DNA from: Mustelus asterias
Lineage: Eukaryota
Length of the DNA: 64,000 nucleotides
Direction: 5' to 3'
Assembly (NCBI RefSeq): GCF_964213995.1
Contig: NC_135816.1
Location: 11,036,001 to 11,100,000 of the forward strand
Below are positions 17 to 53,150 of the stretch, piece by piece (positions within the stretch are counted from its first letter, which is position 1; every line of letters starts with the position of its first letter). The position numbers and the translations under genes are program-made. The notes under the pieces were generated by a model that was not told the origin of the DNA, made no database searches, and worked only from the letters and a program-made list of their open reading frames with translations.

Positions 17-446
17 CAATGACCCTTGCCCCTTGTTAGCGCAGAGACCCTTGCCCCTGGTTAGTACAGTGACCTTTGCCCCTTGTTAGGGCAGTGACCT
101 TTGCCCCTTTTAGTACAGTGACCTTTGCCCCTCGTTAGCACAGTGACGCTTGCCCCTTGTTAGTACAGTGACCCTTGCCCCTCATTAACCCATTGACCCT
201 TGACCCTTGTCAGTGCAGCGACCTTTGCCCCTCGTTGGCGTAGTGACCCTTGCCCCTCGATAGGGCAGTGACCCTTGCCCCTCTTTAACGCATTGACCCT
301 TGCCCCTGTTTAGCGCAGTGAACCTTGCCCCTCATTAGCCCAGTGACCCTTGACCCTTGTCAGCACAGTGATCTTTGCCCCTCATTAGCACAGTGACCCT
401 TGCCCCTTATTAGCACAGTGACCTTTACCCCTCATCAGCACAGTGA
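17..446. repeat. 25-bp minisatellite, about 17 copies (cagtgaccYttgcccctYRttagca), in CD74 intron 1
   Basis: Units read directly from the sequence. Confidence 0.95.
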
Positions 447-504
447 ATGTAGGAATAGTTGGAGGTAGAAGATATTGCAGTGAAAGTTCAAGGAATGCCA
501 GCAT

Positions 505-910
505 TTGGCGATCACTTCAACCACCTGGTGCGGAGGGGAGCGGGCAGGCGGGGAAGGCAGAGGACCTCCTTGTGAACCTGCCTCTGGGCCTGGCCAAGCT
601 TGCCATAAACAGGTCCAGGCAGTGGGTGACTGAGGGAGTCATCTGAAGTGACTGCCTGCCCCTCTTCCGCAGCTATATTCGCAGCTGGGTGTGCCTACAT
701 AGGGAGCGTGCAGTGTCCACGAGCACCGCTGAGATCTTCTGTACTCATTGGGCACCGCAGGGGCTGGGACGTATTATTGACTCTTTTGATCACATTTTGG
801 TTTGATGTTTCCTTTATGCTTTGTTTCTTGTTTCAGGTGGTCCTCCTTCCTTTAAGGGGCTGCCCCTTTTACTTTGTCCCTCAGTTTGTTTGGTCAGTTT
901 AATTGTTTTG
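505..910 (+). mobile_element. Degenerate 3' end of an L1/Tx1-like LINE
   Basis: Translation EDLLVNLPLGLAKLAINRSRQ resembles the Tx1-type ORF2 C-terminus, followed by a T-rich 3' UTR-like tract. Confidence 0.5.
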
Positions 911-978
911 GGAATGGCAACCCCCTCAACCTTAGAGAGCACTCCAATAACCCTCCGTTTGACTTGTCTATTTTCCAG

Positions 979-1157
979 CAGCAGCACGTGCTCTCGAAGC
1001 CTCCTCTGGGGCGGTGTGACCGTGCTGGCCGCCATGCTAATCGCTGGGCAGGTAGTCAGCGTCATGTTCTTGCTGAAGCAACAGGACAAGATCACGGGTC
1101 TGCAGAAGACAACAGATCGAATTGAAAACAAGTATTCTTCAGGCCGGTATCCAGTCA
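979..1157 (+). CDS. CD74: CD74 exon 2 (juxtamembrane Cys, transmembrane helix)
   Basis: Acceptor ttttccag ends 978 (phase 2). Encodes STCSRSLLWGGVTVLAAMLIAGQVVSVMFLLKQQDKI, similar to human [37 protein letters not shown]. Donor a|gtacgt at 1158 gives the phase 1 needed by the next exon. Confidence 0.9.
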
Positions 1158-4100
1158 GTACGTACATCCTCTTTCCTTTCAGTACTTTGACTCAAGCCAA
1201 AATAAATCTGAGGGCCCCCGAGATAGGGCAACACGATATTAGCTAAATGGCAAATAGACTGAAAGCAAGTTGTTACATCTCAAGTATTATGCAGAAATGA
1301 TGCTAGTTTCTTACCGTGCAGGAACTGGATTTACAGCGTTTTATATAATGTTCTAAATGCCATTCAGCTCTCGACTTCCAGCTCTTTCTACAGCTCATTA
1401 TTTTCCTCAGAATCAGCAACCAGGTTCAAGCACACTGAGCATCAATAGTAAGCAGACCCACATCCGCCATGATTGAGCACTGCACAATCAAGGTTCGCAA
1501 CAGTAATCTGTGTCAGCAACCAGGCTCAAAAGTTTAAAGTTTTTTGATTAGTGTCACAAGTGGGCTTACATTGACACTGCAATTAAGTTACTGTGAAAAT
1601 CTCCCAGTCACCACACTCCGGCGCCTGTTCGGGTACACTGAGGGAGAATTTACACTCGGGTACACTGAGGGAGAATTTAGCACGGCCAATCCACCTAACC
1701 AGCATGTCTTTCGGACTGTGGGAGGAAACCGGAGCACCCGAAGGAAACCTACGCAGACACGGGGCGAACATGCAGATTCCACACAGTGACCCAAGCCGGG
1801 AATTGAACCTGGGTCCCTGGTGCTGTGAGGCAGCAGTGCTAACCACTGTGCCACTGTTCCACCCCCAAGACCTGGTTTCGATTCCCGGCTTGGGTGACTG
1901 TCTGTGTGGAGTTTGCATGTTCTCCCCGTGTCTACGTGGGTTCCCTCCGGGTGCTCCGGTTTCCTCCCACACTCCAAAGATACGCAGATTAGGTGGAGTG
2001 GCCGTGCTAAATTGCCCCTTAATTTCAGGTGGTATCACCTGGGCACACAATCGGATGGTGGAATCAGGTGAGGTTAGAAATTTCACAAGGCAAATGGACT
2101 TTGAAGAGGACTAAGCCGCAAGATTATGGGAATAACATGGGAATGGAGAGCTCTTACACTGACAGGATGAACCGAATAATCACTTTATTGTTGTAAGGCT
2201 TTATGATTCTATGATGAGGAGTGGGGCATTCAGCTCCTTGTGCCTGCTAAATTTAATTAGATCATGATGGATCTGCATCTTAACATCGACCACATTACTT
2301 CCATCACCCATAACACTCGTGTGTAACCACAGTCTGGGGGCCAGATTCTCATGCTCCTTGTCCGCGTCGGAGCAGAGACAGGTTGAATTGAAAAATGGCA
2401 GACCGGGTCTGATCCCGGGATTCCCGCTCCCATTCCCAGTGCCAACAGTTTTCACTGGCACAGGGTGAGGGTGGGGATAGCGAGCTCGACACCCTGTACA
2501 CCCAAACTGGCCAGCCTCATTGCCGGGATAGGCATCTCATATTCTCCTATCCGCCTCCCCATACTATCCCCTCCCCGCAATTTCCATGGAGCCAGACCAG
2601 CTTCTAGGTGACTCATAGCCCACACCTCCTCAGAGCAGATAGGAACTACAGTCTGGATTCAGGAACCTTTTGAGAAATAAGTGTAAAATGTCTTATCCAT
2701 ACTCCCTCTACTGTATCCTCACACACCAGAACCAATCAGCTGTGTCATAATAAATGACACTAATGCTGAGGGGAAAAAGCATTTAGAAATCTGATTTGCA
2801 AAAATAACTGCCGTTCTTACAACCCCATAAAAGTGTCAGACAGAGCCATTAATAACATTAATAAGCAAAGCTTCATGTCACAACTCTTCGTCCTGTCCAA
2901 ATATACATACAGACATTGACAAAACAGAACAAAGAAAAAGATAACTGACCATAATCTCATAAACATGTCAATCAAACAGAACCCAGGCTCAGCTAATCCG
3001 TTTGTAAGTCTTAGTGATCAGCCAAGCATTTATAATGAGGCCATCTGGAAACTGTGTTAACAGAATTAGATAGCTAGAGATCTGTTCCTTGAAATGGGCT
3101 CATTATGCATTTTATGTTAATGCAATCTAACAAAACTGTTAATCATACCCCTGAACAGCCATGCCACAGGCCATCAAATTTTCAAAATCAGCCAAACATT
3201 CATAATAGCCACAGCTATCAAAAGATTATTGAGTTCCCAACTCCAAAGGCTGAAATTGAAAGAGTAGAGGCTGACTTCTGCATTTCAAAACAGATTACCT
3301 GTCAATCAATGTGGAGGAGCAACATATTTTTGAATGCATTATAGCATTTTCTTCATGGGAAAAAGTACTGTAATGCATATCAATGCTTATACAATGGTAG
3401 TCAAAGTAATGTTCAACTTACCTTTGCAGGATAGAGTCCTGCAATGAAGCACTGCATCAAAACAGATCCACATTGCAATATAACATCTTATAGTAACATT
3501 TGAAGGCGTCAAAACATTTAACACTTCCTGTCAAAATGTTCCCAACTCCCCAGGCCTCCTGAAGGGTCATGTGCTCTCCAAGGACATGTTTTTTTTTTGT
3601 GTTTGAATACCCGCCAGCACATGAAAATAGCGTGCGGGAGGAAGTAGTCGTCACAATGAGGACTCCTGACCTCAGAAAGGGCGAGTGTGCGTTTTGCACT
3701 CAAGGCCTTCCCAACCCGCCAAAAGTCCAGATGAAAATGGTGTGGGGTCGGGAAGGTGGAGGAAAATTGCTTCTTCTGCAAAAAGGAAATAAGCACCGAA
3801 ACGCATCTCTGTTTCGCTGTCTTCTCTCCATGTTGTCAATGAGTTGCACTCATAACAAAATAATTTCCACTTATCTCTTCAGAGCCTAAGCAAATAATGC
3901 ATCTCCGACCCATGATGATGGACATGCCCATTTCGTACATCGACCCAGACAACGAAGGTCCAAAGGTAACTTCCAGCAAAGAAAGAAAAGCAAGACATTA
4001 CACTTCACATGAATGGATGGAACGACGGAGGTTGAGGGGTGACCTGATAGAAGTCTACAAGATTATGAGAGGCATGGACAGAGTGGACAGTCAGAAGCTC

Positions 4101-7100: not shown

Positions 7101-10100
7101 GGCCCTTTCTGGCAGCACATTCCGGATCACAATTCATTTGTGTGAAAACAAATTCTCCCACCTGGCTCCTTCGCCAATTAACTTTAACCTGTGACCTCTG
7201 ACCCGGCTTCAAGGAAACAATTCCTTCCCTTATACACTCTCAAAACTGTTTGACCGCCTCTATTCAATCTGCCCTTTAACCTTCTCTGCTCGAAGGAGAA
7301 CCAACCCAGCTTCTCCAGACCCGCCACATAACTGAAGCTCTTTATCCCCGGCACCGTTCTGATAAATCCCCTCCGCACCCTCTCCAAAGACCGCGACCTT
7401 ACTGGTCGTTTGCACTCATGGCGCATCAAGGTCAGAGAATTTGACGACCAGCCAAATCTCCATTCACTGCGGCGGGGATGGGAAAATCCCATCAGCATGA
7501 ACGGTGGTAAGATTCTGGCCAAATTCTTTTTTAAAATTCATTTGATTATTTGACACGGGCGTCGCTGGCTGACCAGCATTTATTGTCCATCCCTAGTTGC
7601 CCTTGTCGGGCAGTTGAAAATCAACCACATTGCTGTGGCTCTGGAGTCACATGTAGGCCAGACCACGTAAGGATGGCAGATTTCCTTCCCTAAAGGACAT
7701 TAGTGAACCAGATGGGTTTTTCCAACAATCGACAATGGTTTCATGGTCGCCTGTAGATTCTTAATTCCGGATGTTTTTTATTGAAGTCAAATTTCACCAT
7801 CTGCCGTGGCGGGATTCGAACCCGGGTCCCCAGAACATTAGCTGAGTTTCTGCAATAATAGTCTAACAATAATACCACTAGGCCATCACCTCTCCAAGTC
7901 AGCCAACCTAATGGTGTTCGGAAGTAGGTATGATCCTCCAGCTGGGGCGGATCTAGTGGTTTATAAAGGGTCTTTAAAAATGATTTTGAAAGGTTATATT
8001 TGAGGAGTTATGGGAAAAGGATGGGCAATGAATGCCGGACTAATCAGATAGTTCTTTCAAAGAGCTGGAATACGCTGGATGGGTCAAATGGTTCTATAGC
8101 ACCAACATGTCTCCATATTGTGACCTGAATGTGGGAAGAATGGCCCAAAAGATATTGAAGGCTTTGATCATTCACGTAAATTTCCCAACCGCGAGGGAAG
8201 AAAAAGCACTTGACGGACTTTAAGGCTGTTTGTGTGTAGCTCAAATCTGAACAGAAGGTTTAATATCGTTGAAGAATGGGTGACTACACCTTTGGTTAAA
8301 CGGTTAGCCAAATATGACATGATGTTGCTTTTTCAATGGCAGAAGGAGAACACAAGCAAGGCGATTCCTGAATTCAACAGCTCCTTCTCCGCTAACATCG
8401 ACCTACTGAGAGAGAGCATGACCGAATCCGAATGGCAGGTTAGTGCTTTGTCGCAAAGGATTACATCGACCTTACACCACTGGGAAAGGCCATTCGGCCC
8501 AACTGGTCCATGCTAGTGTTAAGGCTCCACACGTGCCTCCTCCCACCTCACCCCATCAGCATAACCTTCTAGTCCTTTCTCCCTCATGCAACTTATTAGC
8601 TTCCTCTTAAATGCATCTACACTATTCACCTCAACTGCTCCCAATGATAGATTGGTGAATCTGTGGAACTCTTTGCCGCAGAAGGCTGTGGAGGTCATTG
8701 AGTGTCTTTAAGACAGAGATAGATAGGCTCTTGATTAATAAGGGGGTCAGGGGTTATGGGGAAAAGGCAGGAGAATAGGGATGAGAAAAATATCAGCCAT
8801 GATTGAAGGGCAGAGCAGACTCGATGGGCCGATTGGCCTAATTCTACTCCTATGTCTTATGGTCTTATGGTCTTATAGCAAACTCCCAGTCTCTGGTTGA
8901 CAAAATTTTTCCTGAATTCTTCTTGGATTTATTAGTGTCTGTCTTACACTGATTTCTCTCATTCTAACAGGTCTAAACAATATAGAAGCAGGAAGGATGT
9001 TCCCGATGGTGGGGATGTCCTGAATCAGGGGTAATAGCATTGGGATACAGGGTAGGAAGTTTAAGACGGAGATGAGGAGAAATTTCTTCACGCAACAAGT
9101 GGTCAGCCTGTGGAATTCCCTACCCAGAAAGCAATTGAGGTCAAAACATATGTTTTCAAGAAGCAGTTAGATATAGCTCTTGGGGCGAAGTGGATCAAAG
9201 GGGGAAGACGGGATTAGGCTATTGAATTGGATGATCAGCCATGATCATAATGAATAGTAGAGCAGGCTCAAAGGGCTGAATGGCCTCCTCCTTCTCCTAT
9301 ATTCTATGTTTCCAGGTCTCTTTAGTTTTAGTTTCTCCCACAACTCATGAACTGGAAGAGGCCATTCAGCCCCTCCAGTGTGTTCTGCCATTCAGTGATA
9401 TCATGGCTGATCTGTGCCTTAATCCCATCCTGGCTCCATAATTCCTTGATACCCATGGCTAGCAAAGATCTATCACCCTCAACTTTGAAAATGTATAACT
9501 GAGCTGGCATCTACTGGGGCGGCACGGAGGCACAGTGGTTAGCACTGCTGCCTCACAGCGCCAAGTACCTGGGTTCAATTCCGGCCTTGGATGACTGTGT
9601 GGAGTTTGCACGGTCTCCCCGCGTCTGCATGGGTTTCCTCCGGGTGCTCCAGTTTCCTCCCACACTCCACAGATGTGTGGGTTAGGTGGATTGGCCATGC
9701 TAAATTTCCCCTTAGTGTCATGGGAAATACATGGGGATAGGGCCTGGGTGGGATTGTTGTCGGTGCAGGCTCGATGGGCCGAATGGCTTCCTTCTGCATT
9801 GTAGGAATTCTATGATCCTTCTATTCTATACTGCTTTTCTGTGGGAGAGCGTGCCACACCTCCAGGAGCTTCTGTGTGAAGAATTGGAACCATCTTCTCT
9901 GCGTCTACTCTTCCTGAACCATTTGAATGTTTAAAGTTTGTGGAAACTTTTCCCTTCAGTGTTTGAGCTTGGTTTGAGAGATGCTTCGATACCTAACATT
10001 AAAATGTCTGCCTCCCGCCAGCAAAAGTAAACCCACAATGCAGTTCAGAGGACTCAAGCCATCAGATACTGACCTGGTGATATATCTTTTGTTTACAGGA

Positions 10101-13100
10101 CTTCGAAACTTGGCTCCGAAACTGGCTTCTCTTTCAGCTCATTCAGGAGAAGAAGCCAGTCCCGACAACCAGTCCCCCCAAACCTGAACCTCAACCTAAA
10201 CACAACGGTATGTATCTGTGATATGCTTTATATGATTGGCACCTCATCCACCACCTTCGACATTCACTCCCCCTGCCCCCGCCCGCCCCCATACTGACGC
10301 ACACTGCGGCCAGAGTGTTCCATCTACAAGATGCACTGCAGCAACTCACCAAGACTCCTTCGACAACACCTTCCAAACCCACAACCTCTACCATCTGGAA
10401 GGACAAGAGCGGCAGATACCTGGGAACTCCACCACCTGCAAATTCCCCTTCGAGCCCCTCACCATCCCGATTTGAAAATATATCGGCTGTTCCTTCACTG
10501 GGTCAAAAATCCCTAAGCTCCCTCCCTAAAAGCACTGTGGGTGTACCTACACCACATGGACTGAAGAAGTTCAAGGTGGCAGCTCACCACCACCTTCTCA
10601 AGGGCAACAAATGCCTAGCCTGGCCAATGGCACCCTTATCCTGTGGAAGAATGAATTAAATATGTTGAGCACCAGTCAATTAACTCCTTCTGAAGTATAA
10701 CCACTGTTGTTATATATACAAAATGATAACCAATTTGTGCTCACCACAAACACAAGTGAGATAAATGAGCAAATCATTGATTTTAATTGAGGGATTGATG
10801 CTAAATGGTAAAAAGGCTGCAGTGATTGGGTGGAGGTCTTAAATACTTCAAAGAGTTTGCACGTTCCCCTCGTGTCTGCATGGGTTTCCTCCGGGTGCTC
10901 CGGTTTCCTCCCACACTCCAAAGATGTGCAGGTTAGGTGGATTGGCCATGCTAAATTGCCCCTTGGTGTCAGGGGGACTAGCTAGGGTAAATGCATGGAG
11001 TTACGGGGATAGGGCGGGATTGTGGTCGGTGCAGACTCGATGGGTCGAATGGCCTCCTTCTGCCCTGTAGGATTCTATAACGTCCCAGTCAATGAAATAA
11101 CTTGAGGTGTATTCTCTTAGGTGGACATAACAGACTCCACAGAACTATTTTGAAAAATAGGGACAGTCTCCGTTGGTGGGCTGAGCCAATATTTATTCCT
11201 CAACAACATCATGAAACATCATTAAATTTAAACAAATTATCTGGAAATGATCTCATTACTGTTTGGGAGACCTCCCTGTGTTGGGCAAAACTGAGTGTGG
11301 CACAGGCACAGCGGTTAGCACTGCTGCCTCACAACACCAGGAACCTGGGTTCGATTCCTGGCTTGGGTGACTGTTTGTGTGGAGTTTGCACATTCTCCCT
11401 GTGTCTGCGTGGGTTTCCTCCGGGTGCTCCGGTTTCCTCCCACAGTCCAAAGATATGCAGGTTAGGTGGATTGACCGTGCTAAATTGACGATTAGTGTCA
11501 GGGGATTAGTAGGGTAAACATGTAGGGTTACAGGAATAAGGCCTGGGTGGGATTGTGGTCAGTACAGACTCGATTGGCTGAATGGCCTCCTTTTGCACTG
11601 TAGGGATTCTATGACCAGTGGGATTGGGAAAATTGGATCACTCTTTCAAAGAGGCAGGATGGGAAGACTGGACTCCTTCTGTTCTCTGATTCTATGGCCC
11701 CTACTTTTCCAGAACAGCTGTAGCTTCCTTCCCTCCAAGGAATCTCCTCAGCTCCCACATGGCTACTGATCCTGCTTCCCTCACCAGCTGTGTCCCTGCC
11801 TGATCCAAATGCTCTTGTTCCTCCCTCTCTAGCAATGGATGGGAATCCCATTTCCCAGACACCAGGAGGTCACTGCTGTGTGGGTGCAGTGACTCTGCTC
11901 CAAAGGCTGGTGAGCAGACCTGGCTGAGCATACTGAGAGAGATCCACTCACAATAAAGGGCAGGCAATGGCCTAGTGGTATTATCACTAGACTATTAACC
12001 CAGAAGCTCAGCTAATGTTCTGGGGACCCGCGTTCGAATCCCAATTTTATTGAATTTGAATTCAATAAAAAGTATCTGGAATTAAGAATCTACTGATGAC
12101 CATGAAACCATTGTTGATTGGCCGAAAAACCCATCTGGTTCACTAAGTTTACTTATTAGTGTCACAAGTAGGTTGGCATTAACACTGCAATGAAGTTACT
12201 GTGAAAATCCCGTAGTCGCCACACTCCAGCGCCTGTTCGGGTACACTGAGGGAGAATCTAGCACCTAACCAGCACCCGGAGGGAACGCACACAGACACGG
12301 GGAGAACATGCAGACACTGCACAGACAGTGACCCAAGCTGGGAATTGAACCCAGGTCCCTGATGCTGTGAGGCAGCAGTGCTAACCACTGTGTCACCGTG
12401 CCACCCCTTATGTCCTTTAGGGATGGAAATCTGCTGTCCTTACCTGGTCTGGCCTATTTGTGACTCCAGAGCCACAGCAACATAGTTGACCTCAGGCAAC
12501 TAGGGATAGGTAATAAATGCTGGCCAGCCAGCGATGCCCATATCCCACAAATGAATAAAAGAAAACTCACAAAGTACTCATAAAGACATCACTTGCTAAC
12601 TAGTGCTGTGGCCTTTCCCTTTAAATCATTCAATGGATGTCACAAGAGGGGTTTACATCAACAAAGCATTTTGAACCCAGTAAGATATCCCAATGTGTTT
12701 CACAGGCAGTATTTTACACTGAGCAACATAATGAGATATTAGAAACATGGAAACATAGAAAAACTACAGCACAAACAGGCCTTTCGGCCCCACAAGTTGT
12801 CCCTACCTTCTAGGCCTATCTATAACCCTGTTATTAGAAGTCATCAAAACCCTGATCTAGGATGTACATTTTAAGGAGAGAGAGGTAAGTAGATGCAGAG
12901 GATTCAGAGGGGATTCGGAGCTAAAGTCCAAGGCAGCTGAAGACATGGCTGCCAGCGATGGCCTGAATCAAGTCAGGGATGACGGAGTTGGGAGAGGGCG
13001 GATAACTCGGGGAGAGGGGGGGTTTGTCTGGCTACGGTTTCAGTGAGACCATGGAGGGATTTGAAAAGAAGGGTGGGAGTTTTGAGATTGAGGCTGGACC

Positions 13101-16100
13101 AGGATGCACTACAGAGGGTGGCGATGACCTAGTGGTATTATCACTAGACTATTAATCTAGAAACTCAACTGATGTTCTGGGGACCTGGATTCGAATTTTG
13201 TCACGGCGGATGTTAGAATTTGAATCAATAAAAAATATCTGGAATTGAGAATCTACTGATTGTCGATTGTCGGAAAAAACCATCAGGTTCATTAATGTCC
13301 TTCAGGGAAGGAAATCTGCTGTCCTTAACCGGTCTGGCCTACATGTGACTCCAGAGCCACAGCACCGTGGTTGACTCCTAACTGCCCCTTGGGCAACTAG
13401 GGATGGGCAATAAATGGCCAGCCAGCGACGCCCGTGTCCCACGAATGAATAAAAAAAAAAGATCCACAGTCATAGAGGATGATGGGTATAGTGCGCAAAC
13501 CACATCGGCACCAACTTGCTCTGGAGAATTGGTGCCAAGTGCATCATTGTAATGTTATATTAAACTGCTGCATTATTTGTGTCTGCGACAGGGAGAATGA
13601 TTTATTCAAGCATTGTGATGAAACCAATGATGGCTAACCTGCCAGATGAAATCAAGCCGAAGGAGGCCAAATCTCCCAATGTCATTCCTGCATTGAAGGG
13701 TAACTATGGCAACTAATGTTTAATCCGTGGCGAATGCGGGGATTGGAAAGGACCAGTGTGGTTCAGCGTTTGGGTGTCAGTGTAACGGTGAGACTAGCCC
13801 TCCCTTTCCCCCACCCCATACGCAGAGCAAAGATTCGATCTGGGTTAGGGATGGTGTCTTCAGGCTGTTCACTCACATTGCTCAGAACAGCAGAACCAGC
13901 TCAAAGCAATAAAATTCAGAAGTGGTTTTGAGACATGCGGGCCGGAATTTTACTGGCTTGCCCACTCCAGAATCGGGGCGCAGAACCGGGCATTCTCTGT
14001 TGGCCTCGGGCGGGATCTTACGAGCCTCGGGTGGGCGAGGCGGTAAAATTCCGGCAGCTGGGTGGGATCTCCCCCCTCCCGCCCCCAATGCTGGTGGTAG
14101 GGTCACAGGCAGGGGTGGGAAATTTGGAGGGATGCCCGTCTTTTAACGGCCCTGCAAATTTTCTCGTCCCGCCCACGACGATGCCCCACCTGTGCCAGGA
14201 CTGGAAAGTTCTGCTGGATGTCTGGTGAGTGTAATGTGCTCCGAAGAATGGGTAATTTTGGATCTGGGGTTCCCCAAGTTCTCCGCTACTGGGGTTTTTC
14301 CTCATCTCCTGCCTGGGCCTGTTGTAAACTCAGTGGCACCATTTGTGACACAATAAGTTCTGACTCATTGATCACCATGATTAGTGAGAAACGCGTGCAA
14401 ATGGGGAGTGGGGGCTCAAGCCAAAGAGCCTTAGCCATAGCATGTGTACAGGCTGGGTTCACCAGAATGATTCTGGGGATACGTCAATGTTATGAGGACA
14501 GACCTGAATTATTGGGAATATTTGCACTGGAGTAGAGAAGAATTCATTGAGGTTTGTAAATGTCTGATGTGCCTTTGATTAGGGAATTGATTAAAGGGAA
14601 AGGTTGTTTCCCCTTGTGGGAGAGTCCAGAACCAGAGGACACAATCTTAGAGTAAGGGGGTCACACACTTAAGACGGGGATGAGGAGGTATTTCTTCTCT
14701 CAAGAGGGGAGTGAATCTGTGGAATTCTTTACCGCAGAAGGCTGTAGAGGCTGGGTCATAGGATCATAGAATCCTACAGGAGGCCATTCAGCCCATCGAG
14801 TCTGCACCGACCACAGTCCCACCCAGGCCTTATCCCCAAACCCCATGCATTTACCCCAGCTAGCCTCCCTGACATTTAGGGTCAATTTAGCATGGCCAAT
14901 CCACCTGATCCGCACATCTTTGGACTGTGGGAAGAAACTGGAGCACCCGGAGGAAACACATGCAGACACGGGGGAGAATGTGCACACTCCGCACAGACAG
15001 TGACCCAAGGCGGGAATCGAACCCGGGTCCCATCGTTAAGTATGTTCAAGGCTGAGATAGACAGATTTTTAATCAGTAAGGGAATCGAGGGTCATGGAGA
15101 TAAGGCAGGAAAGTGGAGTTGAGGATTATCATATCAGATCATGATTCCATTGAGAGGTGGAACAGACTCAATAGGTCGAAGGGCCTACTTCTGCTCCTAC
15201 GACTTATGACCTTATGGATGCATAGAGTTTAGAAGAAACATCTCCACACTGGCTGGGAACTTGTGCCACGGGGAGTTACTGAGGCAGGAACTGGCTATTG
15301 AATGGAAAACTAGTGAAAGCCTTGATTCAGAAAGTACAAGGTGAAAACCCGTCTGTGGGATTAGGGTTGGATTGATCTTGAGAAAAGGAGACAGACAAGA
15401 TGTGTTGAAAGACCTCCTTCTGTGCTTAAAGGACAAGGTTCAACCATGGGATTCTAAGGTCACAGAGCCAAGCTGAAACCAATCGGCACAAAAAGAACTG
15501 AGCCATTATTGACAATTATTTGCTCACTCAAAGAAGTGGACCCAGTTCTGACCACACACATTTCACAAAACACAAAGACAAAGAAAGTCAACTTGAGAGA
15601 CAAAACCAACAGTTATCTTTTCTGGGGAGGTATTATGATTGATTCTCGGGATGTGGGCATTGTGGGCGAGAGCTACGTTCATCGGTAAAGGGGATGGTGG
15701 AAGTTCTTCTTTGAAGTCCTCCTCTCTGTGGGATATTCCTTGAAGAAACTCAGGGCCCTGATGGGCAACTTCTGAGGACAGTCAACAGTCGACCATGGTG
15801 GTGTGGGACTGGAGTCACATTTAGGCTCATATCAGGTAAGGACAGCAGGATTCTTTGCTAAACGGATATTAGTGAACTAGTTGGGTTCGCATGACAACAG
15901 CTCCTTACTCACTTTTACTGATATCAATATTTCATTTCAGTATCTATTTTTGAACTGAACTCCAACATTCACCTCACAACTCGCAACCCTATGCACTTAG
16001 CATGGCCCATCCATCTAACCTACACAACTTCGGACACTAAGGGACAATTTAGCATGGCCCATCCATCTAACCTACACAACTTCGGACACTAAGGGACAAT

Positions 16101-19083
16101 TTAGCATGGTGCATCCACCTAACCTATACATCTTTGGACACTAAGGGGCAATTTAGCATGGCCAATCCACCTAACCTACAGCCTTTTGGACACTAAGGGG
16201 CAATTTAGCATGGCTAATCCATCTAACTTATACATCTTTGGACACTAAGAGGCAATTTAGCATGGCCAATCCACCTAACCTGCATACTTTTGGACACTAA
16301 TGGGCAATTTAGCATGGCCAATCCACCTAACCTACAGCCTTTTGGACACTAAGGGGCAATTTAGCATGGCTAATCCATCTAACTTATACATCTTTGGACA
16401 CTAAGAGGCAATTTAGCATGGCCAATCCACCTAACCTACATACTTTGGACACCAATGGGCATTTCACCAGGGCCAATCCACCTAACCTGAATATCTTTGG
16501 ACCGTAACCCCATGCTTAGGTTCCATCTTATCCCAGAGCTCCGAGACTGCCCCCATGGAATATCAACATTGCTGAGTTCAAAACTGATCTGCTTATTCCA
16601 CACGGGATCACATTCCATAGGAACTCAAGCACAAGATCAGGAATGTTCTAGAATGCTGAGCTTTGAGTGTAGGTTTTCACCTACACATCTTCTCAAGAAA
16701 GGACTCTTAAGTTCTTTTGTTATGCCATTGGAGACTTGTCCAGTGTCCCCTTCACCTTCGTAGAAGCATTACAGTGCAGCAGGAGGCCATTCGGTCCATC
16801 GAGTCTGCACCGATGTTAGGGCGATGGGCCGATGTTAGTCTTTGCTGTGGATGTTAGGATACTGACCCCTCGTTCCCGGTCCCTCAGGATATCCTGATCC
16901 CCTCTCTTACCGGAAAACGTGCAGTCAGCAGAGTTACAAATCCCAACTCCAGAGACGTCTCCCAATCATGTGTGCTTTGAATGGGGAGTTAGAGGCATCA
17001 GTTTTAATGAGGGGGGGAAGCAACAACAGTAATGTGCATTGATATAGCACCTTTAATACAATAAAATATCCCAACCTACTTCACAGGGGTGATGGGCACC
17101 AAGCCACATAAAGGGACACCAGGATAAGCTTGATCAGAAAGTTAACTTTAAAGAAACAGTGAGCTAGGGAGGCAGACAGGGTTATGGAGGAAATTCCAGA
17201 GCCGATGGCCTAGGCAACTGAAGGAACCACTACCAATGGTGCAATTAGAATCAAGAATGCGCAGGAGGTTAGAAAGAGAGGAATGCCGAGACCCCGGAGG
17301 CTTGTAGGGCTGGAGGAGGTGACAGAGATAGGGAAGAAGGAAGAGGCCCATGGAGGAATTTGGGGAAGGAACTGCAAGCAAAGGACCTTGGGGTGTGAAG
17401 AACATCATTCTGATGTCAAACATTGCCTTCCCTCGTCCAGTGCTCAAAGCCGACACCGAGTGTGAGAGACGCCGCAAGCAAGCCGACTTGAAGCCTGGAG
17501 TCTTCCGCCCTAAATGTGATGAGGAGGGCAACTATGAGGTGAAGCAGTGTTGGCCCAGCACGGGGTTCTGTTGGTGCACTTACCCGAATGGAACTCAGAT
17601 CGCAGGAACAGCCAGCCGTCACCAATTAGACTGCAAACGTATGTTTTAGTTTTCTTGCTCTTGGTGTGATTAACAAGTCTCCCATTTCAGAGTAGCTGAT
17701 GCCCACGTGTAGCAAGACCTGGACAATGTTCAGGTTTGGCTGGCTACTGAGGAAATCACTCCATACAAGTGCCCGGCAATGACCATCTCCAGCAAGAGAG
17801 AGAATCTAACCATCTCCTCTTGACATTCGCTGCTATTACTGTTGTGGAATCCCCCGTGTCTCTGAATTACACTAACATTGTCCAGCATTCTGTAATCCTG
17901 CAAAGCAGGCGAGCCTGCAGAGGTTCAAGGCTAGAGCCACTACCCACCTGTGCTACGGATCGCGCTATCATTTGCCCTCTAGATAAGGAAGGTCTGTTGC
18001 ACGTGGTACATGCTCTACCCAAAGAACTTAACAAAGCAAGAAATGAAGAAAGACCTAATGTATTACCCCTACCAATCTCAAAGCCCGTGTACAGGCTATA
18101 ATAAACTCTACGTATCCATTCGTTATCCTCTCACCGCCTATGTGCCCTCCACCCTACCACGGGTTCTCCCCACCCAGCTATGTCCTGAGGGAAAATTCAA
18201 TATAAATGTTCCCTGATGCCAAAAGGTCATTCAGCCCAATGGGTCCGTGGGGTATTTATGTTCTTGACCAACTACCCACCTCCTCCTCTTTACACTCAAT
18301 CTCATCCAAAACCTTGCTGCCCGTTAGCTCCCAAAGAAACAATGCCTCCTTTTCAAAACTCACATCCCAGTCTATGCAACCCATCCTTGTAATTTTAACC
18401 CTGTAAAGTGGGGATGGGGGGAACGTTAGCAGGTAAAGAAAGGGGTGTGTTTTGCTCACTATTTACGGTAATGTTGTTAATGCACCCACCATGGTTTTTT
18501 AACTTTGCCTTTGATGGAAATTGCAGACAGAGTCCCAATTGAACCTCTAAGTTTCTGTCATCTGTGCCTCAATGAGTTAACGCTCTTGTTTCTGAATCGG
18601 AAGGTTGTGGGTTCCACAAACTCAGACTTGAGCACAATCTCCAGGCTGACACTCAGGGGCTTGTCTTGGGTCATTGCCTGTGTGGAGTCTGTGTGTCTGC
18701 GTGGGTTTCCTCCGGGTGCTCCGGTTTCCTCCCACAGTCCAAAGGTGTGTGGTTTAGGTTGATTGGCCATGATAAATTGCCCCTTAGTGTCAGGGAAATT
18801 AGCAGGGTAAATATTTGAGGTTACGGGGATAGCGCCTGGGTGGGATTGTTGTCGGGGCAGGCTCGATGGGCTGAATGGCCTCCTTCTGCACTGTGGGTAT
18901 TCTATGATTCTATAGCCAGTGATGCCTATGTTCTATGAAAGATTTTAAAAAATAAATCTACACAAATTGTTTACATACAGAAACCAGAGGAAAGCAACAT
19001 TTAAAAAAATTGTTGAAATTTCAAAATTTTGTATTAATTGTCAAGCTGATGTGAACTCTTTCTCTTTGATTGCAGCGCACTAA
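979..19083 (+). CDS. CD74: CD74 / MHC class II invariant chain, multi-exon gene, 5'-partial (exon 1 upstream of window); join 979-1157,3883-3965,6844-6906,8343-8438,10099-10207,13592-13699,17441-17638,19076-19083
   Basis: Exons join in one open frame with GT-AG introns: SSTCSRSLLWGGVTVLAAMLIAGQVVSVMFLLKQQ...PVKPKQIMHLRPMMMDMP...TLLEQVQELLKKENTSKAIPEFNSSFSANIDLLRESMTESEWQDFETWLRNWLLFQLIQ...ECERRRKQADLKPGVFRPKCDEEGNYEVKQCWPSTGFCWCTYPNG. Domain order (type II TM with AGQ, CLIP, trimerisation domain, thyroglobulin type-1) and intron phases match vertebrate CD74. Confidence 0.95.
1530..1864 (-). mobile_element. HE1/V-type tRNA-derived SINE, tail type B
   Basis: Head ggcacagtggttagcactgctgcctcacag...ggttcaattcc (A and B boxes), core gggtttcctccgggtgctccggtttcctcccac, tail ...gtaagcccacttgtgacactaat. 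Small internal tandem duplication at about 1630-1680. Confidence 0.85.
1869..2020 (+). mobile_element. Partial HE1/V-type SINE, inverted relative to the adjacent copy
   Basis: B box plus core, running to ccgtgctaaattgcccctta. Confidence 0.8.
3883..3965 (+). CDS. CD74: CD74 exon 3 (CLIP)
   Basis: ttatctcttcag acceptor, aag|gtaact donor, phase 1-0. Encodes (K)PKQIMHLRPMMMDMPISYIDPDNEGPK, a Met/Pro-rich CLIP-like segment. Confidence 0.9.
4018..4409 (+). mobile_element. CR1/HER1-type LINE 3' fragment
   Basis: ERRRLRGDLIEVYKIM and FFTQRVVGAWNSLP C-terminal ORF2 motifs, plus gggccgaagggcctgtt 3' tail. Confidence 0.9.
5710..5996 (+). mobile_element. Penelope-like element terminal repeat (pLTR) fragment
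   Basis: Ends in a hammerhead motif followed by ccaaataaacctgttggactttaacctggtgttgt, which is shared with the 36.8-kb copies. Confidence 0.65.
5922..5958 (+). ncRNA. Minimal type I hammerhead ribozyme motif
   Basis: tcac / CTGATGA / a / ggagc-aac-gctcc / GAAA / gc / TC / gtga: stem I tcac:gtga, 5-bp stem II, palindromic agct in place of stem III, UC cleavage site. Confidence 0.8.
6319..6624 (-). mobile_element. HE1/V-type SINE, tail type A (CR1-like tail)
   Basis: Head and core as in the other copies; tail gatgggccaaatggcctccttct...attctatga. Confidence 0.85.
6844..6906 (+). CDS. CD74: CD74 exon 4
   Basis: Long pyrimidine tract plus cag, donor aag|gtagga, 63 nt, phase 0-0. APKPTPAKPLTLLEQVQELLK resembles the first trimerisation helix (human MTEDHVMHLLQ). 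Not visible in the ORF track in this frame. Confidence 0.85.
7525..7895 (-). mobile_element. Second tRNA-derived SINE family (type C)
   Basis: Reverse complement reads ggcctagtggtatt...gggttcgaatcc...ccatctggttcactaatgtcctttagggaaggaaatctgcc...ggacaataaatgctgg; further copies at 11.96, 13.1, 24.1 and 30.5 kb. Confidence 0.75.
8343..8438 (+). CDS. CD74: CD74 exon 5 (trimerisation domain)
   Basis: 96 nt, phase 0-0, donor cag|gttagt. KENTSKAIPEFNSSFSANIDLLRESMTESEWQ aligns with human [32 protein letters not shown]. Two N-glycosylation sequons (NTS, NSS). Confidence 0.92.
8647..9312 (+). mobile_element. Two CR1-type LINE 3' fragments (about 8647-8876 and 8965-9312)
   Basis: gtgaatctgtggaa / gagatgaggagaaatttcttcac motifs and cagccatgat...gggccga..ggccta tails. 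Confidence 0.75.
9516..9828 (+). mobile_element. HE1/V-type SINE, tail A, full length
   Basis: Runs from ggggcggcacgg to ...gaattctatga. Confidence 0.88.
10099..10207 (+). CDS. CD74: CD74 exon 6 (trimerisation domain C-terminal helix and Pro-rich linker)
   Basis: ttttgtttacag acceptor, g|gtatgt donor, phase 0-1. DFETWLRNWLLFQLIQ matches the FESWMHHWLLFEM motif. Confidence 0.93.
10235..10660 (+). mobile_element. LINE 3' fragment whose tail resembles that of the type C SINE
   Basis: ccatctacaagatgcactgcagcaactcacc...caccaccaccttctcaagggcaa; related copy on the minus strand at 37.6-38.2 kb. Confidence 0.65.
10853..11614 (+). mobile_element. Two HE1/V-type SINEs, tail A (about 10853-11079 partial, 11296-11614)
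   Basis: Core and tail motifs shared with the other copies. Confidence 0.85.
11960..12563 (+). mobile_element. Type C SINE interrupted by a minus-strand V-type SINE, tail B (about 12147-12407)
   Basis: The type C consensus ggttcactaa|tgtcctttag is split by the inserted element. Confidence 0.8.
13115..13460 (+). mobile_element. Type C SINE, full length
   Basis: From cctagtggtattatcactagact to gaatgaataaaaaaaaaa. Confidence 0.8.
13592..13699 (+). CDS. CD74: CD74 additional linker exon encoding a second CLIP-like peptide
   Basis: cattatttgtgtctgcgacag acceptor, aagg|gtaact donor, 108 nt, symmetric phase 1-1, open in the required frame: (G)RMIYSSIVMKPMMANLPDEIKPKEAKSPNVIPALK. Unique sequence between repeats. 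Confidence 0.75.
14450..15216 (+). mobile_element. CR1 3' fragment interrupted by a minus-strand V-type SINE (about 14757-15030)
   Basis: CR1 text gaggctgggtc...ttaagtatgttcaagg is split by the SINE. Confidence 0.75.
15998..16502. repeat. About 52-bp minisatellite, 9-10 copies, derived from a V-type SINE internal segment (minus orientation)
   Basis: Unit ttagcatggccaatccacctaacctacacatctttggacactaaggggcaat is a circular permutation of the SINE segment between core and tail. Confidence 0.92.
17441..17638 (+). CDS. CD74: CD74 thyroglobulin type-1 exon (p41-type cassette)
   Basis: ccttccctcgtccag acceptor, c|gtatgt donor, 198 nt, phase 1-1. Six Cys with FRPKCDEEGNY, QC and CWC-x-x-PNG motifs. 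Confidence 0.95.
18659..18914 (+). mobile_element. HE1/V-type SINE, tail A, 5'-truncated
   Basis: Core and tail motifs. Confidence 0.85.
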
Positions 19084-21157
19084 GGGTGAGGATGGACTCA
19101 TGATGGAGGGTCAAACTCATCCTGATTGGCTTCGCTCCACAATTAAATCATACATTAATTGCAACTACTGATTTCTATTAACCTTGGGTATGATTGTTAA
19201 CCATTGAGAGCTGGCTCCTTATCTGACTATCATAATTTCCTTCTCTTGTGTTAAAGATTTGTCTTCACTGATTTTGTTTTATATAAATATAGTAGATCAC
19301 CCTGATCTTTGACACGATTCATTTTGCTCCCCCCCCCCCAAAAAAAGAATTGAATTTCCACAGAGATGTTCTGATCCCATTCCCGAGGGGGACTTGGCAA
19401 AACGCAGCCGTGTCCGGCATTCCTCTCCAAGATCCGTTCCTGGGTCTCCCACCAGAGTTGTGACAGGGGACAGTGGGGAGTGGGGACTGGGGGTGTGGGG
19501 GAACAACATCTCCTCAATTCCAGGCCCTTCCTTAAAAAAAAATCTGCATTTTCAAACTTGTAAACATTGAGACACGAGGAGACGTGAAGAGTAAAATGCC
19601 ACACAGGTCTGATTCAATCCTAGGAATCCCAAAGGAATGTAGACTGGGACAGGGTATCATGAGTAACTGGACACCAGAACACTGCATTGAATGGTAGAGT
19701 TCTGAAAATTCACAACATCCAAAAGGGAACCAAATTAGGGCAATGGTTTGAGATTGGGACCCTTCTTTGTGTCCCATGATGTCTCCCACTTGTTATATAA
19801 ACCTGCCCTTCTCTCTTAGATACTGACCTATCCATTAGCCACACACCCCATCTTGATTTGAACCTATAACCTCCGTTTGTTCATTAATACTGGGTCATGA
19901 TCCTAGAACTCTGGCCACACCCTCTCTCCCCCTCCCCTCTCACCATCCCCCCCACCACCCACTCTCACCCCCCCCCCCCCCCCCCCCCCACCCTCCACAC
20001 ACCCCTTGTCTCTCTGCGTTCCACCCCGCCTACTGCAGGCTGCAAGGAGCATCACTCCACAAGCTAAAACAATTTCAGAAGAAGGCCCACACCATCTTCT
20101 CAAAGGTCAACGAGGGATGCTCAATGTATGTTGGCCTGGCTAGCATTGGCCACATTCAGAAGCAGAAGTAGATAAATTGGGTTAAAAATTGTTCCTTTGC
20201 AATTTGTTTTTAGATGTCAAGTGATTTTGTTCCCATCCCCATATTTTGAGGTTCGAGATTTGAGCCAGTTATAGTGTTACCAGTTTATTTTCCTAAAACA
20301 CCACACCTTACAGAAGCATCACATTACAGCTGTATTCTTGGCTATTGATTAATTTGTTTGAAGCTAGTTTTGCCTATAATCAACTTATGAGAAAATGACA
20401 TTGCTTCCTGATCATTTTTATTTGTTACGGAATGGCGATTGCTGACTGTAGATGGGGAAAATCTTTTCGCAATAAAGGGAGGGAATTTTATCCTTGTGTT
20501 TTATTTTGGACAATGGAAGTGACCAATGTGTGACTGACAGAAATATAAAAGGTTTGCCCGGTTCATGGGGCCTAGCAATGAGGCCTCAATCCAATAACAA
20601 CTCCTTGTATTATGAGCAGTGAATGGGAAAGCTTCATTGCAGGGTTGCCAAAGCTCCGGGGCTGTCCTGGAACCTACAAAAATTAAAGATTAATCACCAG
20701 GACATTTCTAGAGGAGAAAATCTATGGCCACATTTCAAAAATGTTCGGTGTGTCTTTTTTTGTTATTGGCTAAATTGGAAAAGGGATAACAAGTCTGTTT
20801 GCAAGCATCAACTAATCTGCTAGCTATGAGACGGGTTTACTATTGGGAGGTGGGGAATGGACAGGTTGGACAACCAATGATGGGACTGTGTGGGCAGAGG
20901 AGGGAGGTCACACAACACAACCTGCCGGAATATGTCCAACCAGAGTTGGGAACCCAAGTCTAGAGTGGAATTTTCCCGTCCTGCCCGCCAGGGGAATTGT
21001 AGCGGACGGGACACAGACCATGCAAAGGTCCATTGACCTCGGGCAGGATTTTTGGCCTTCGGGTGAGCGCGGCTGGAAAATCCCGCCCAAGTGTCTGTCT
21101 TTTTATTGCAGTTCTTTCACACACACAAAGTTAAAAACATCTATTCTCTGAAAATAA
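19076..21157 (+). other. CD74: Probable CD74 terminal exon (PH-stop at 19081-19083) and 3' UTR; end uncertain
   Basis: Strong acceptor gaactctttctctttgattgcag with branch-like gctgat upstream, followed by repeat-poor AT-rich sequence. Candidate AATAAA near 20471 and 21153. No transcript evidence. Confidence 0.45.
20962..21090. mobile_element. Short MITE-like element with imperfect terminal inverted repeats; relatives at about 4441-4560, 7395-7522, 13938-14210, 29455-29590, 37134-37282
   Basis: Ends gtggaattttccc ... ggaaaatcccgccc; shared internal ccatgcaaagg/cattgacctcg motifs. Superfamily not determined. Confidence 0.5.
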
Positions 21158-49764: not shown

Positions 49765-50009
49765 TGTGGTGGACCTCAGTTGTACCTTTGTCCTATATGG
49801 ACCACCGTTGTGTGTGTTTGTCGTACCTGGACACACCCCCTTCCAGTTTGGTTCCTCCCCTCGGCACCTAGTATAAAGGTGGCTGTCTCCTCCCCCTTGT
49901 TCAGTCCAGGACGGTTATTTGTTGGGATCTGCTCCTGATTCTGTTGTTAATAAAAGCCTACACTTGTATTGGCACACCGGTAGTCTTTCGCCTTATTGAT
50001 AGCGCATCA
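49765..50009 (+). repeat. Gypsy LTR 1 (245 bp)
   Basis: tgtggtggac...gcgcatca; contains TATAAA, TCAGT initiator and AATAAA. Confidence 0.95.
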
Positions 50010-50034
50010 ATTTTATTCACAACAGTTGACCAGC

Positions 50035-53000: not shown

Positions 53001-53102
53001 ACGGAGCCTGGGCCGACATCGCTCCCTGCTCGGACGACTCTGCGACCTGCACTACGACGATCGCGACGGCGGATCAAGCCACCGGTTCGCCTGGACTTGT
53101 AA
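50035..53102 (+). pseudogene. Gypsy unit 1 gag-pol, disrupted, with about 0.9-kb RT/RNase H deletion
   Basis: Stop at 50527-50529, frameshifts, deletion junction cccatatcatgtgcc near 51800, stop in integrase. Confidence 0.9.
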
Positions 53103-53150
53103 TATTGTTACCGCTTCACCCCCATGTTGTTTTTTAAAGGAAGGGGTGAA

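What the first reader, a model, noticed from the sequence alone, without database searches (positions are those of the whole stretch)
13592..13699. Extra CD74 exon encodes a second CLIP-like peptide, probably from duplication of exon 3
Seen: a 108-nt phase 1-1 exon between the trimerisation and thyroglobulin exons reads GRMIYSSIVMKPMMANLPDEIKP. It aligns with this gene's own CLIP exon (IMHLRPMMMDMP vs SIVMKPMMANLP; codons cga ccc atg atg atg gac atg ccc vs aaa cca atg atg gct aac ctg cca). Both exons have a phase 1 acceptor and the same gtaact donor after aag(g). It also resembles mouse CLIP as I recall it (RMATPLLMRPMSMDNM). Established: mammalian CD74 has one CLIP and no exon at this position. 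From memory, an extended linker before the thyroglobulin domain has been described for cartilaginous-fish Ii; I cannot confirm whether its CLIP-like nature was noted. Inference: a two-CLIP invariant chain could occupy additional or different class II grooves, or tune peptide exchange in a lineage reported to lack DM.
Basis: partly seen in the sequence, partly recalled or inferred. Interest (0 to 1): 0.85.

Follow-up and report, generated by a model that had tools for sequence, protein, structure and literature searches.

The report
Shark invariant chain's second CLIP-like exon
Sharks, rays and chimaeras carry an extra, expressed exon in the MHC class II invariant chain gene, and its conserved core resembles the gene's own groove-blocking CLIP peptide more than chance allows, which hints at a second class II-binding segment in animals that lack the peptide-exchange helper DM.

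Summary
Window 13592-13699 is a 108-nt, phase 1-1 exon (exon 7) of a CD74/invariant-chain gene. All its exons match the Mustelus asterias protein P0006 at 100%.

Spliced contigs from four coded organisms use it. It joins to the thyroglobulin (Tg) exon at 17441 or straight to the last exon at 19076, and upstream to sequence like the end of exon 6.

The exon is present in 16 of 17 cartilaginous-fish CD74 proteins from sharks, rays and chimaera. Human Ii has no counterpart. It is not new as sequence: the nurse-shark Ii (P0002) and NCBI models already contain it.

The CLIP-likeness is mixed:
- In this species alone it is near chance: 3.9-5.8% of shuffles reach the protein score, and the DNA shows nothing.
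- Across the clade the two exon profiles match collinearly over 23 columns: hhalign P 3.9e-6, and 0 of 600 column permutations reach the score.
- The flanks add signal beyond the PMM core: 1 of 20000 permutations.
- Chimaeras show only the core.

Ancient duplication of exon 3, or convergence on one binding site, is likely. Groove binding is inference only.

No paper I could search calls this linker CLIP-like, but the key 2012 paper was not held. The scan did not find this before on other DNA.

The parts
979..1157 (+). CD74 exon 2 (transmembrane and membrane-proximal helix), phase 2->1. Exon 1 is not in the window.
   Evidence: tblastn of P0006 residues about 37-93; acceptor ttttccag| and donor |gtacgt
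3883..3965 (+). CD74 exon 3, the CLIP exon (PKQIMHLRPMMMDMPISYIDPDNEGPK), phase 1->0
   Evidence: lies within the Pfam MHC2-interact match 5-112 of P0006
6844..6906 (+). CD74 exon 4 (Pro-rich spacer and start of the trimerisation region), phase 0->0
8343..8438 (+). CD74 exon 5 (trimerisation domain), phase 0->0
10099..10207 (+). CD74 exon 6 (last trimerisation helix plus Pro-rich spacer ...PPKPEPQPKHN), phase 0->1
   Evidence: loose ends before 13592 in X1, X2 and X6 read like its end
13592..13699 (+). CD74 exon 7, the finding: 108 nt, phase 1->1, (G)RMIYSSIVMKPMMANLPDEIKPKEAKSPNVIPALK
   Evidence: present in 16 of 17 orthologues
13592..13644 (+). Conserved core of exon 7 (GRMIYSSIVMKPMMANLP; clade consensus GRKI[FY]SSxAMKPMMVxLP). 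Its second half is the CLIP-like part.
   Evidence: Column conservation; hhalign and permutation tests
17441..17638 (+). CD74 exon 8, thyroglobulin type-1 domain, phase 1->1, alternatively skipped
   Evidence: Pfam Thyroglobulin_1 at 258-311 of P0006; joints 13699->17441 and 17638->19076 in X1 and the skipping joint 13699->19076 in X1, X2, X7
19076..19083 (+). Coding part of the last exon: two codons, then TAA (protein ends ..CKPH with Tg, ..ALKAH without). The 3' UTR runs on to at least 19398.
   Evidence: contig pieces 19075-19398; P0006 ends CKPH

Best explanation
Shown:
- 13592-13699 is exon 7 of 9 of a houndshark (Mustelus asterias or very close kin) CD74/invariant-chain gene. It was included in every spliced form seen, but exon-7 skipping could not be tested, because exon 6 lay outside the laid stretch.
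- It sits after the trimerisation domain and a Pro-rich spacer. It is kept both in the form with the thyroglobulin domain and in the form without it, where it is practically the C-terminal tail.
- It is conserved across sharks, rays and chimaera and is missing from human Ii.
- It encodes a segment predicted to be disordered. Its first 14-17 residues (GRKI[FY]SSxAMKPMM..LP) are about as conserved as CLIP itself.

Supported statistically: from [LM][RK]PMM onward, the exon is collinear with the CLIP exon down to the PK at the end of that exon.

Inferred:
- The exon arose by an ancient internal copy of the CLIP exon, made before elasmobranchs and chimaeras split, with one base gained at the donor to fit a phase 1-1 slot. 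Alternatively it converged on the same binding site.
- It most likely acts as a second, probably weaker, ligand for the class II peptide groove. It hangs from the membrane-distal trimerisation domain close to the grooves, where it could hold further class II dimers or compete with CLIP.

Odds: exon real 0.98; CLIP-relatedness not chance about 0.75; groove binding about 0.25-0.3.
For: Gene identity:
- P0006 matches every exon at 100%.
- Pfam finds MHC2-interact, MHCassoc_trimer and Thyroglobulin_1 in P0006.

Splicing:
- GT..AG joints 13699->19076 (X2 and X7 with 108-letter sides, X1 with 29) and 13699->17441 (X1).
- Exon depth is hundreds to thousands, against 2-40 in the flanking intron bins.

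Conservation:
- 16 of 17 cartilaginous-fish proteins have the exon, including Callorhinchus.
- From the per-column values I averaged by hand: mean pairwise column identity is about 0.6 over the first 14 columns, against about 0.25 in the exon's tail and about 0.67 in the CLIP core.

No human counterpart: 8vrw_C aligns to P0006 residues 5-203 and 252-312 only.

CLIP-likeness:
- Profile score 33.97 against a permuted mean of 13 (sd 2.6); 0 of 5000, 0 of 2000 and 0 of 2000 permutations reach it.
- hhalign probability 87.2, P 3.9e-6, 23 columns; 0 of 300 and 0 of 300 column permutations reach it.
- In the rest of the protein the best match of the exon-7 profile is the CLIP region (P 3.6e-5; next hit P 0.93).
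- Own-against-own tests give 0 of 5000 shuffles in P0007, P0009 and P0013, and at most 54 of 5000 in 9 of 16 proteins.
- Flanks beyond PMM: 1 of 20000 (all), 2 of 20000 (sharks), 99 of 20000 (batoids).

Disorder: both segments have pLDDT below 50 and are coil.

Geometry: the trimerisation domain is membrane-distal, above the grooves (PMC11087810, passages read).
Against: - In the window's own species the similarity is at chance level: 776-1163 of 20000 shuffles, and 9265 of 20000 codon shuffles at DNA level.
- Six of 16 proteins, including both chimaera-type sequences, the nurse shark and Narcine, are not significant. Chimaera flanks add nothing (6854 of 20000). The extended similarity could therefore be an elasmobranch-only development.
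- The orthologues are related, so pooled tests count one history, not 16.
- The donor phases differ (0 against 1).
- Pfam's CLIP model gives no second match in P0006, P0007 or P0015, and none on the exon alone.
- If the first Pro is placed at pocket 6 as in human CLIP (numbering recalled), pocket 1 falls on an invariant Ser, which is a poor anchor.
- No binding, structure or peptidome data exist here.
- No substitution pattern shared by CLIP and exon 7 across species was seen by eye in A2.
Confidence: 0.6

Rival explanations
1. Plain spacer exon. The exon only lengthens the flexible linker between the trimerisation domain and the Tg domain, and its likeness to CLIP is a by-product of Met/Pro-rich composition.
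For: The within-species test is marginal and the DNA test negative. The C-terminal half of the exon is poorly conserved (pairwise identity about 0.1-0.4). The segment is predicted disordered. There is no Pfam CLIP hit. Chimaeras share only [LF][RK]PM.
Against: Column permutations keep composition, yet none of 5000, 2000, 2000, 300 and 300 reach the observed scores. The N-terminal half is conserved from chimaera to sharks, with an invariant Ser and near-invariant Arg, Ser, Pro and Met, which a mere spacer does not need. The neighbouring Pro-rich spacer varies freely in length.
Confidence: 0.2
2. A conserved linear motif with another job, for example a site for the stepwise luminal proteolysis of Ii, an O-glycosylation patch (the invariant SS), or a contact with a cathepsin or the Tg domain. 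It may still descend from the CLIP exon without binding the groove.
For: The most conserved residues (G-R-[KR], SS) lie N-terminal of the CLIP-like part and have no match in CLIP. The left flank alone is weakly significant (705 of 20000). Ii is degraded from its luminal end, and Cathepsin S cuts between CLIP and the trimerisation domain in human Ii (PMC11087810, passages). Tg isoforms have been linked to cathepsins and CLIP release (PMC8010645 citing Criscitiello 2012).
Against: The motif is kept in Tg-less isoforms (P0002, P0012; joints 13699->19076), so it does not depend on the Tg domain. Nothing here points to a specific protease site. The collinearity with CLIP over 23 columns is not explained by this reading unless common descent is also accepted.
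Confidence: 0.3
3. Not a real exon: a chance open frame in an intron.
For: None found.
Against: Spliced contigs in several runs, 100% match to an annotated protein, and presence in 16 of 17 orthologues.
Confidence: 0.01

Closest known systems
Nurse shark MHC class II invariant chain (P0002, UniRef entry for Ginglymostoma cirratum; Criscitiello et al. 2012, Dev Comp Immunol 36:521, not held here, abstract recalled only)
   Same: Same gene and same exon: P0002 ends ...EPEPQPRERKIFSSVAMKSMMVSLPEPAKAPVSKKAN. As I recall the abstract, it mentions an extended linker before the thyroglobulin-like domain in cartilaginous fish.
   Different: Whether that paper noticed the likeness to CLIP could not be checked. 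The nurse-shark copy is among the least CLIP-like: Ser replaces Pro, and 790 of 5000 shuffles reach its score.
Mammalian CLIP (human Ii, PDB 8VRW/8VSP chain C; Wang et al. 2024, PMC11087810)
   Same: A Met- and Pro-rich, disordered luminal stretch next to a Pro-rich spacer and the trimerisation domain. The shark CLIP exon falls within the stretch that aligns to the human CLIP region, residues 5-203.
   Different: Human Ii has one such segment, N-terminal of the trimerisation domain. Exon 7 lies C-terminal of it and has no human counterpart. Shark CLIP and exon 7 share a Pro-to-Pro spacing of 6 (PMMMDMP, PMMVDLP), whereas the human sequence printed has 7 (PLLMQALP). Groove binding is proven for human CLIP only.
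Alternatively spliced Tg exon of Ii (the p41 form)
   Same: It is also a phase 1-1 cassette inserted after the trimerisation exon, and it is the neighbour of exon 7. Skipping it is seen here too.
   Different: The Tg exon encodes a folded domain (pLDDT 82-86) and is optional. Exon 7 is disordered and was present in every spliced form seen.

Membership tests
CD74 / MHC class II invariant chain | N-terminal tail, transmembrane and CLIP region (Pfam PF09307 MHC2-interact) | tested here: met
   P0006, identical to the window's exons, scores E 2e-18 over residues 5-112.
CD74 / MHC class II invariant chain | Trimerisation domain (PF08831) | tested here: met
   E 4e-17 over residues 135-194; it also matches PDB 1iie_A.
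CD74 / MHC class II invariant chain | Optional thyroglobulin type-1 domain produced by alternative splicing | tested here: met
   PF00086 E 8.4e-15; joints with and without exon 8.
[quoted passage not shown] | Sequence relationship to the gene's own CLIP exon beyond composition | tested here: met
   Met at clade level: hhalign P 3.9e-6, with 0 of 600 column permutations reaching the score, and 0 of 5000. Not met in the window's species alone: 3.9-5.8% of shuffles reach the score.
[quoted passage not shown] | Anchor pattern that fits the class II groove (hydrophobic P1, Pro at P6, Met at P9 in human CLIP; numbering recalled) | tested here: inconclusive
   From A2, with the first Pro at P6 the core is S-x-A-M-K-P-M-M-V, which puts Ser at P1. 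With the second Pro at P6 it is M-M-V-D-L-P-x-x-x, which puts Met at P1. A third register puts F/Y at P1. No shark-specific binding rules are available.
[quoted passage not shown] | Occupies the peptide groove of class II and remains after Ii proteolysis | not testable with these tools
   This needs binding assays, peptide elution or a complex structure. The single-chain AF2 model shows only disorder.
Internal exon duplication (exon 3 to exon 7) | Collinear similarity over most of the exon | tested here: met
   23 of the 27 CLIP-exon columns align, down to the terminal PK. Flanks beyond PMM reach the observed gain in 1 of 20000 permutations.
Internal exon duplication (exon 3 to exon 7) | Same intron phases | tested here: inconclusive
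   Both acceptors are phase 1, but the donor is phase 0 in exon 3 and phase 1 in exon 7. A one-base change would be required.
Internal exon duplication (exon 3 to exon 7) | Nucleotide-level similarity | tested here: not met
   The local DNA score of 9 is reached by 9265 of 20000 codon shuffles and 3280 of 20000 base shuffles. This is expected if the event is older than 400 million years (age recalled). DNA of other species could not be fetched.

The most novel reading that the evidence does not exclude
Each invariant-chain subunit of cartilaginous fishes carries two working class II groove ligands: CLIP before the trimerisation domain and a second CLIP after it. An Ii trimer could then chaperone up to six class II dimers. 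Alternatively, the second copy could displace the first in cis and provide a built-in CLIP-exchange step that stands in for the missing DM.
Probability: 0.2. Interest if true: 0.85.

Novelty: new variant of a known kind. Interest (0 to 1): 0.62.

Why it matters
How class II molecules lose CLIP and acquire peptides in vertebrates without DM is an open question. Almeida et al. 2020 (PMC8010645, passages read) state it as such for cartilaginous and bony fish.

A conserved second CLIP-like segment, more than 400 million years old (age recalled) and found exactly in a DM-less lineage, gives a concrete hypothesis. It can be tested with peptides, peptide elution from shark class II, and exon-7 mutants.

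If the segment does not bind the groove, the result still dates an internal exon duplication in Ii. It also marks a conserved luminal motif of unknown partner.

Shark Ii sequences are used as genetic vaccine adjuvants (PMC6177389, passages read; PMC10543776, search listing only). A better map of their functional segments therefore has some practical use.

Tried and rejected
Steps that led nowhere:
1. Representative-library search with the 35-aa exon peptide. The one hit, P0001, is a 1145-aa repetitive junk protein (E 2.8e-4), so nothing was learned. The query is too short to see diverged orthologues.
2. PDB phmmer with exon 7 gave 0 hits. The control with the real CLIP exon gave 2 irrelevant hits (lanmodulin, an EF-hand protein) and no CLIP chain. 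Because the positive control fails, the blank means nothing.
3. Pfam on the exon alone gave 0 families, and there was no second MHC2-interact stretch in P0006, P0007 or P0015. This is a weak test, because that model is dominated by the transmembrane part.
4. The AF2 model of P0006 on A2 has mean pLDDT 50.7, and only the Tg domain is confident. No fold search was run, since a disordered segment gives meaningless matches.
5. ESM Atlas on residues 205-248 of P0006 gave no usable hit.
6. The profile search with A1 returned only cartilaginous fishes: 17 proteins among 8000 scored candidates. Whether bony fishes, coelacanth or amphibians have the exon was therefore not tested. Outside Chondrichthyes only the human chain 8vrw_C was compared.
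Exon structure and DNA of exons 3 and 7 in other species, and thus a test for gene conversion, could not be examined.
8. Papers. Criscitiello et al. 2012 and Dijkstra & Yamaguchi 2019 are not held, and supplements are closed. Searches found no paper that calls the shark linker CLIP-like or describes a second CLIP in Ii. The claim "not in print" rests on these searches only.
9. I looked by eye in A2 for substitutions shared between CLIP and exon 7 across species and saw none. No formal test was run.
P0005 lacks exactly this exon, but that may be an annotation miss.
11. The spliced model was not joined. The window's exons were searched one at a time, by reference or as open frames, and full-length comparisons used database proteins only.
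Full report
WHAT IS THERE. The + strand of the window from about 979 to 19400 holds exons 2-9 of a CD74 (MHC class II invariant chain, Ii) gene. A tblastn of P0006, named by NCBI [quoted passage not shown], finds every exon at 100% identity in its coding part. The window is therefore that species or very close kin. With canonical AG/GT borders the exons are:
- 979-1157: transmembrane exon.
- 3883-3965: CLIP exon.
- 6844-6906, 8343-8438 and 10099-10207: spacer and trimerisation domain.
- 13592-13699: the finding.
- 17441-17638: thyroglobulin (Tg) type-1 domain.
- 19076-19083: two codons and a stop, followed by the 3' UTR.
Exon 1 is not in the window. Pfam finds MHC2-interact (residues 5-112), MHCassoc_trimer (135-194) and Thyroglobulin_1 (258-311) in P0006. 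I searched them singly and used database proteins for full-length work.

THE OBSERVATION. The CLIP exon is 83 nt with a phase 1 acceptor and a phase 0 donor. Both donors read gtaact.

IS IT USED? One call of read laying on 13400-19399 with four runs of four coded organisms (Logan contigs, guessed RNA) gave GT..AG joints at the predicted borders:
- 13699->19076 (Tg exon skipped), in contigs with the full 108 letters on the exon side in X2 (1295-letter contig, depth 775) and X7 (1209 letters), and with a 29-letter side in X1.
- 13699->17441 and 17638->19076 in X1 only, each with a 29-letter side. That is under the tool's own 31-letter rule, so these two joints are weaker evidence.

Just before 13592 the contigs of X1, X2 and X6 continue with letters unlike the intron and, by my own eye, like the end of exon 6. 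No call aligned them. By my hand count X2 matches the window in 25 of 30 letters, and X1 is identical except for six missing letters.

Depth on the exon is 384 to 3196 in X1, X2 and X6, against 2-40 in the next intron bins. The exon differs from the window by 1 of 108 letters in X1, 9 of 108 in X2 and 11 of 108 in X7. So the exon is spliced into both the Tg-containing and the Tg-less forms in several related species. Exon-7 skipping could not be tested, because exon 6 lay outside the laid stretch.

IS IT CONSERVED? A search from the open frame that holds exon 2 found the nurse-shark Ii (P0002). Searching with P0002 and then with the alignment A1 gave 17 cartilaginous-fish proteins. Named by their sources, these are Ginglymostoma, Rhincodon, two Chiloscyllium, Mustelus, two Scyliorhinus, Carcharodon, Heterodontus, Heptranchias, Pristis, Hemitrygon, Mobula, Narcine and Callorhinchus. 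Two more have no visible taxon.

In alignment A2, 16 of 17 proteins have the exon. Only the Chiloscyllium punctatum model P0005 lacks it, and it lacks exactly this exon. The consensus is GRKI[FY]SSxAMKPMMVxLP followed by a variable tail. From the per-column values I averaged by hand: mean pairwise column identity is about 0.6 over the first 14 columns, with one invariant Ser and near-invariant Arg, Ser, Pro and Met. It is about 0.25 in the tail and about 0.67 in the CLIP core.

The human Ii chain of PDB 8VRW/8VSP aligns to P0006 residues 5-203 and 252-312, with only about one human residue between the two stretches. The roughly 48 shark residues 204-251 therefore have no human counterpart.

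IS IT CLIP-LIKE? In the window's own gene the answer is "hardly". The best local alignment (LRPMMMDMP against MKPMMANLP, score 30) is reached by 776, 1163 and 988 of 20000 composition-preserving shuffles. The DNA score is reached by 9265 of 20000 codon shuffles and 3280 of 20000 base shuffles.

The orthologues change the picture, because Mustelus is one of the less CLIP-like species.
- Scyliorhinus torazame has LRPMMMDLPIAYIDPKMEHPK in CLIP and MSPMMVDLPVASDATKAKHPK in exon 7 (score 60, 0 of 5000 shuffles).
- Hemitrygon has MHMRPMIMDLPMSYIDPKAEAPK and MAMKPMLQVLPLSVDQPKASEMPK (score 55, 0 of 5000).
- Nine of 16 proteins reach their score in 54 or fewer of 5000 shuffles.
- Six are clearly not significant: P0002, P0011, P0015, P0017 and P0018 at 790-2648 of 5000, and P0006 at 202 of 5000. 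P0003, at 158 of 5000, is marginal.

Profile tests on the column slices gave the following:
- The profile-against-profile score is 33.97, against 13.0-14.6 (sd 2.5-2.6) for permuted columns. None of 5000, 2000 and 2000 permutations reach it.
- hhalign gives probability 87.2, P 3.9e-6 and 23 aligned columns. None of 300 plus 300 column permutations reach its score of 24.2 (the maxima are 18.6 and 16.7).
- Against the rest of the protein, the exon-7 profile finds the CLIP region first (P 3.6e-5) and nothing else (next hit P 0.93).
- The signal is not only the PMM tripeptide. With PMM fixed, the flanks reach the observed gain in 1 of 20000 permutations (all sequences), 2 of 20000 (sharks), 99 of 20000 (batoids) and 6854 of 20000 (the two chimaera-type sequences).

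Caveats: the sequences share history, so these are tests of one ancestral pattern and not of 16 independent ones. Permutation shows non-random order, not common descent.

HOW IT LIKELY AROSE AND WORKS. The collinearity runs from [LM][RK]PMM to the PK that ends the CLIP exon. In the orectolobiform sharks exon 7 is about as short as the CLIP exon.

This fits an ancient copy of exon 3 placed in the intron before the Tg exon. One base would have been gained at the donor to fit a phase 1-1 slot, and the N-terminus rebuilt to GRKIFSS. The event would predate the split of chimaeras and elasmobranchs. No DNA trace is expected at that age, and none is seen. Convergence on one binding site would give the same picture, and I cannot separate the two.

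Both CLIP and exon 7 are predicted to be coil with pLDDT under 50. Each is tied to the trimerisation domain by a Pro-rich spacer, one on each side. In human Ii complexes the trimerisation domain sits membrane-distal, above the three class II molecules (PMC11087810, passages read). A tail that leaves that domain would therefore hang near the grooves.

My preferred mechanism, by inference only, is a second and probably weaker groove ligand. Alternatives are a processing or glycosylation site, or a contact with another partner, since the most conserved residues (GR[KR], SS) lie outside the CLIP-like part. The anchor reading is ambiguous: depending on which Pro is put at pocket 6, pocket 1 is Ser, Met or Phe/Tyr. 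The pocket numbering of human CLIP is recalled, not taken from a call.

WHAT IS KNOWN. The exon is public sequence: the nurse-shark Ii P0002 and the NCBI models contain it. From memory, the abstract of Criscitiello et al. 2012 mentions an extended linker before the Tg-like domain in cartilaginous fish. That paper and Dijkstra & Yamaguchi 2019 are not held, so I could not see whether the CLIP-likeness was noticed. Seven full-text searches found no paper that says so. Almeida et al. 2020 (PMC8010645, passages read) confirm that DM is absent in cartilaginous fish and that peptide loading without DM is unexplained.

VERDICT. In detail: the exon is real and old. Its existence is already known. Duplication is plausible, and function is untested. 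I class it as a new variant of a known kind (an invariant chain with two CLIP-like segments), of moderate to high interest because it makes the DM-less loading question testable.

Noticed in passing
window 15997-16502: A tandem array in intron 7, with period 52 (9.8 copies, 85% matches) or 156 (3.2 copies). It belongs to a family with very high depth in all four runs (bins 16000-16599).
   Followed up: partly
window 1587-2111, 9543-9801, 10812-11067, 11319-11514, 18576-18815 and others: Repeated open-frame fragments of one interspersed element (peptides such as GFPPGAPVSSH... or SAWVSSGCSGFLPHSKD...) are scattered through the CD74 introns. The bins at 14600-15199 and 18600-18999 also show huge contig depth.
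   Followed up: no
window 50001-60000: GC content is 0.56, against 0.42-0.51 elsewhere. This coincides with the tandem retrotransposon that earlier notes s1-893065 and s1-892830 place at 49765-61056.
   Followed up: no
window 19076-19083; A2 columns 326-344: Mustelus, Scyliorhinus and Carcharodon Ii end two residues after the Tg domain (..CKPH). Heterodontus, Chiloscyllium, Heptranchias, Pristis and Callorhinchus keep a further tail with an SGL/SGV motif. In human Ii a similar tail carries the chondroitin-sulphate site (recalled). Some sharks seem to have lost it.
   Followed up: no
window 971-984: The exon 2 acceptor lies in a cagcagcag run with AGs ending at 978, 981 and 984. This NAGNAG-type site could vary the number of Ser residues. 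Orthologues differ by one residue in this region.
   Followed up: no
window 10180-10207 (end of exon 6): Contigs of run X1, which are otherwise near-identical to the window, lack six letters of the PEPQP repeat at the end of exon 6 (loose ends). This is an allele or a sister-species difference in the Pro-rich spacer, whose length also varies among species.
   Followed up: no
window 3885-3925 (CLIP exon): In the clade consensus the CLIP exon holds an internal repeat, PMMH-LR-PMMM, so the Met/Pro core may itself have grown by a small duplication. In the window's species the first unit reads QIMH, not PMMH.
   Followed up: no
P0005 (Chiloscyllium punctatum model), A2 columns 223-260: This protein model lacks exactly exon 7, while the other Chiloscyllium protein P0004 has it. 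It is either a real exon-skipped form or an annotation miss.
   Followed up: no
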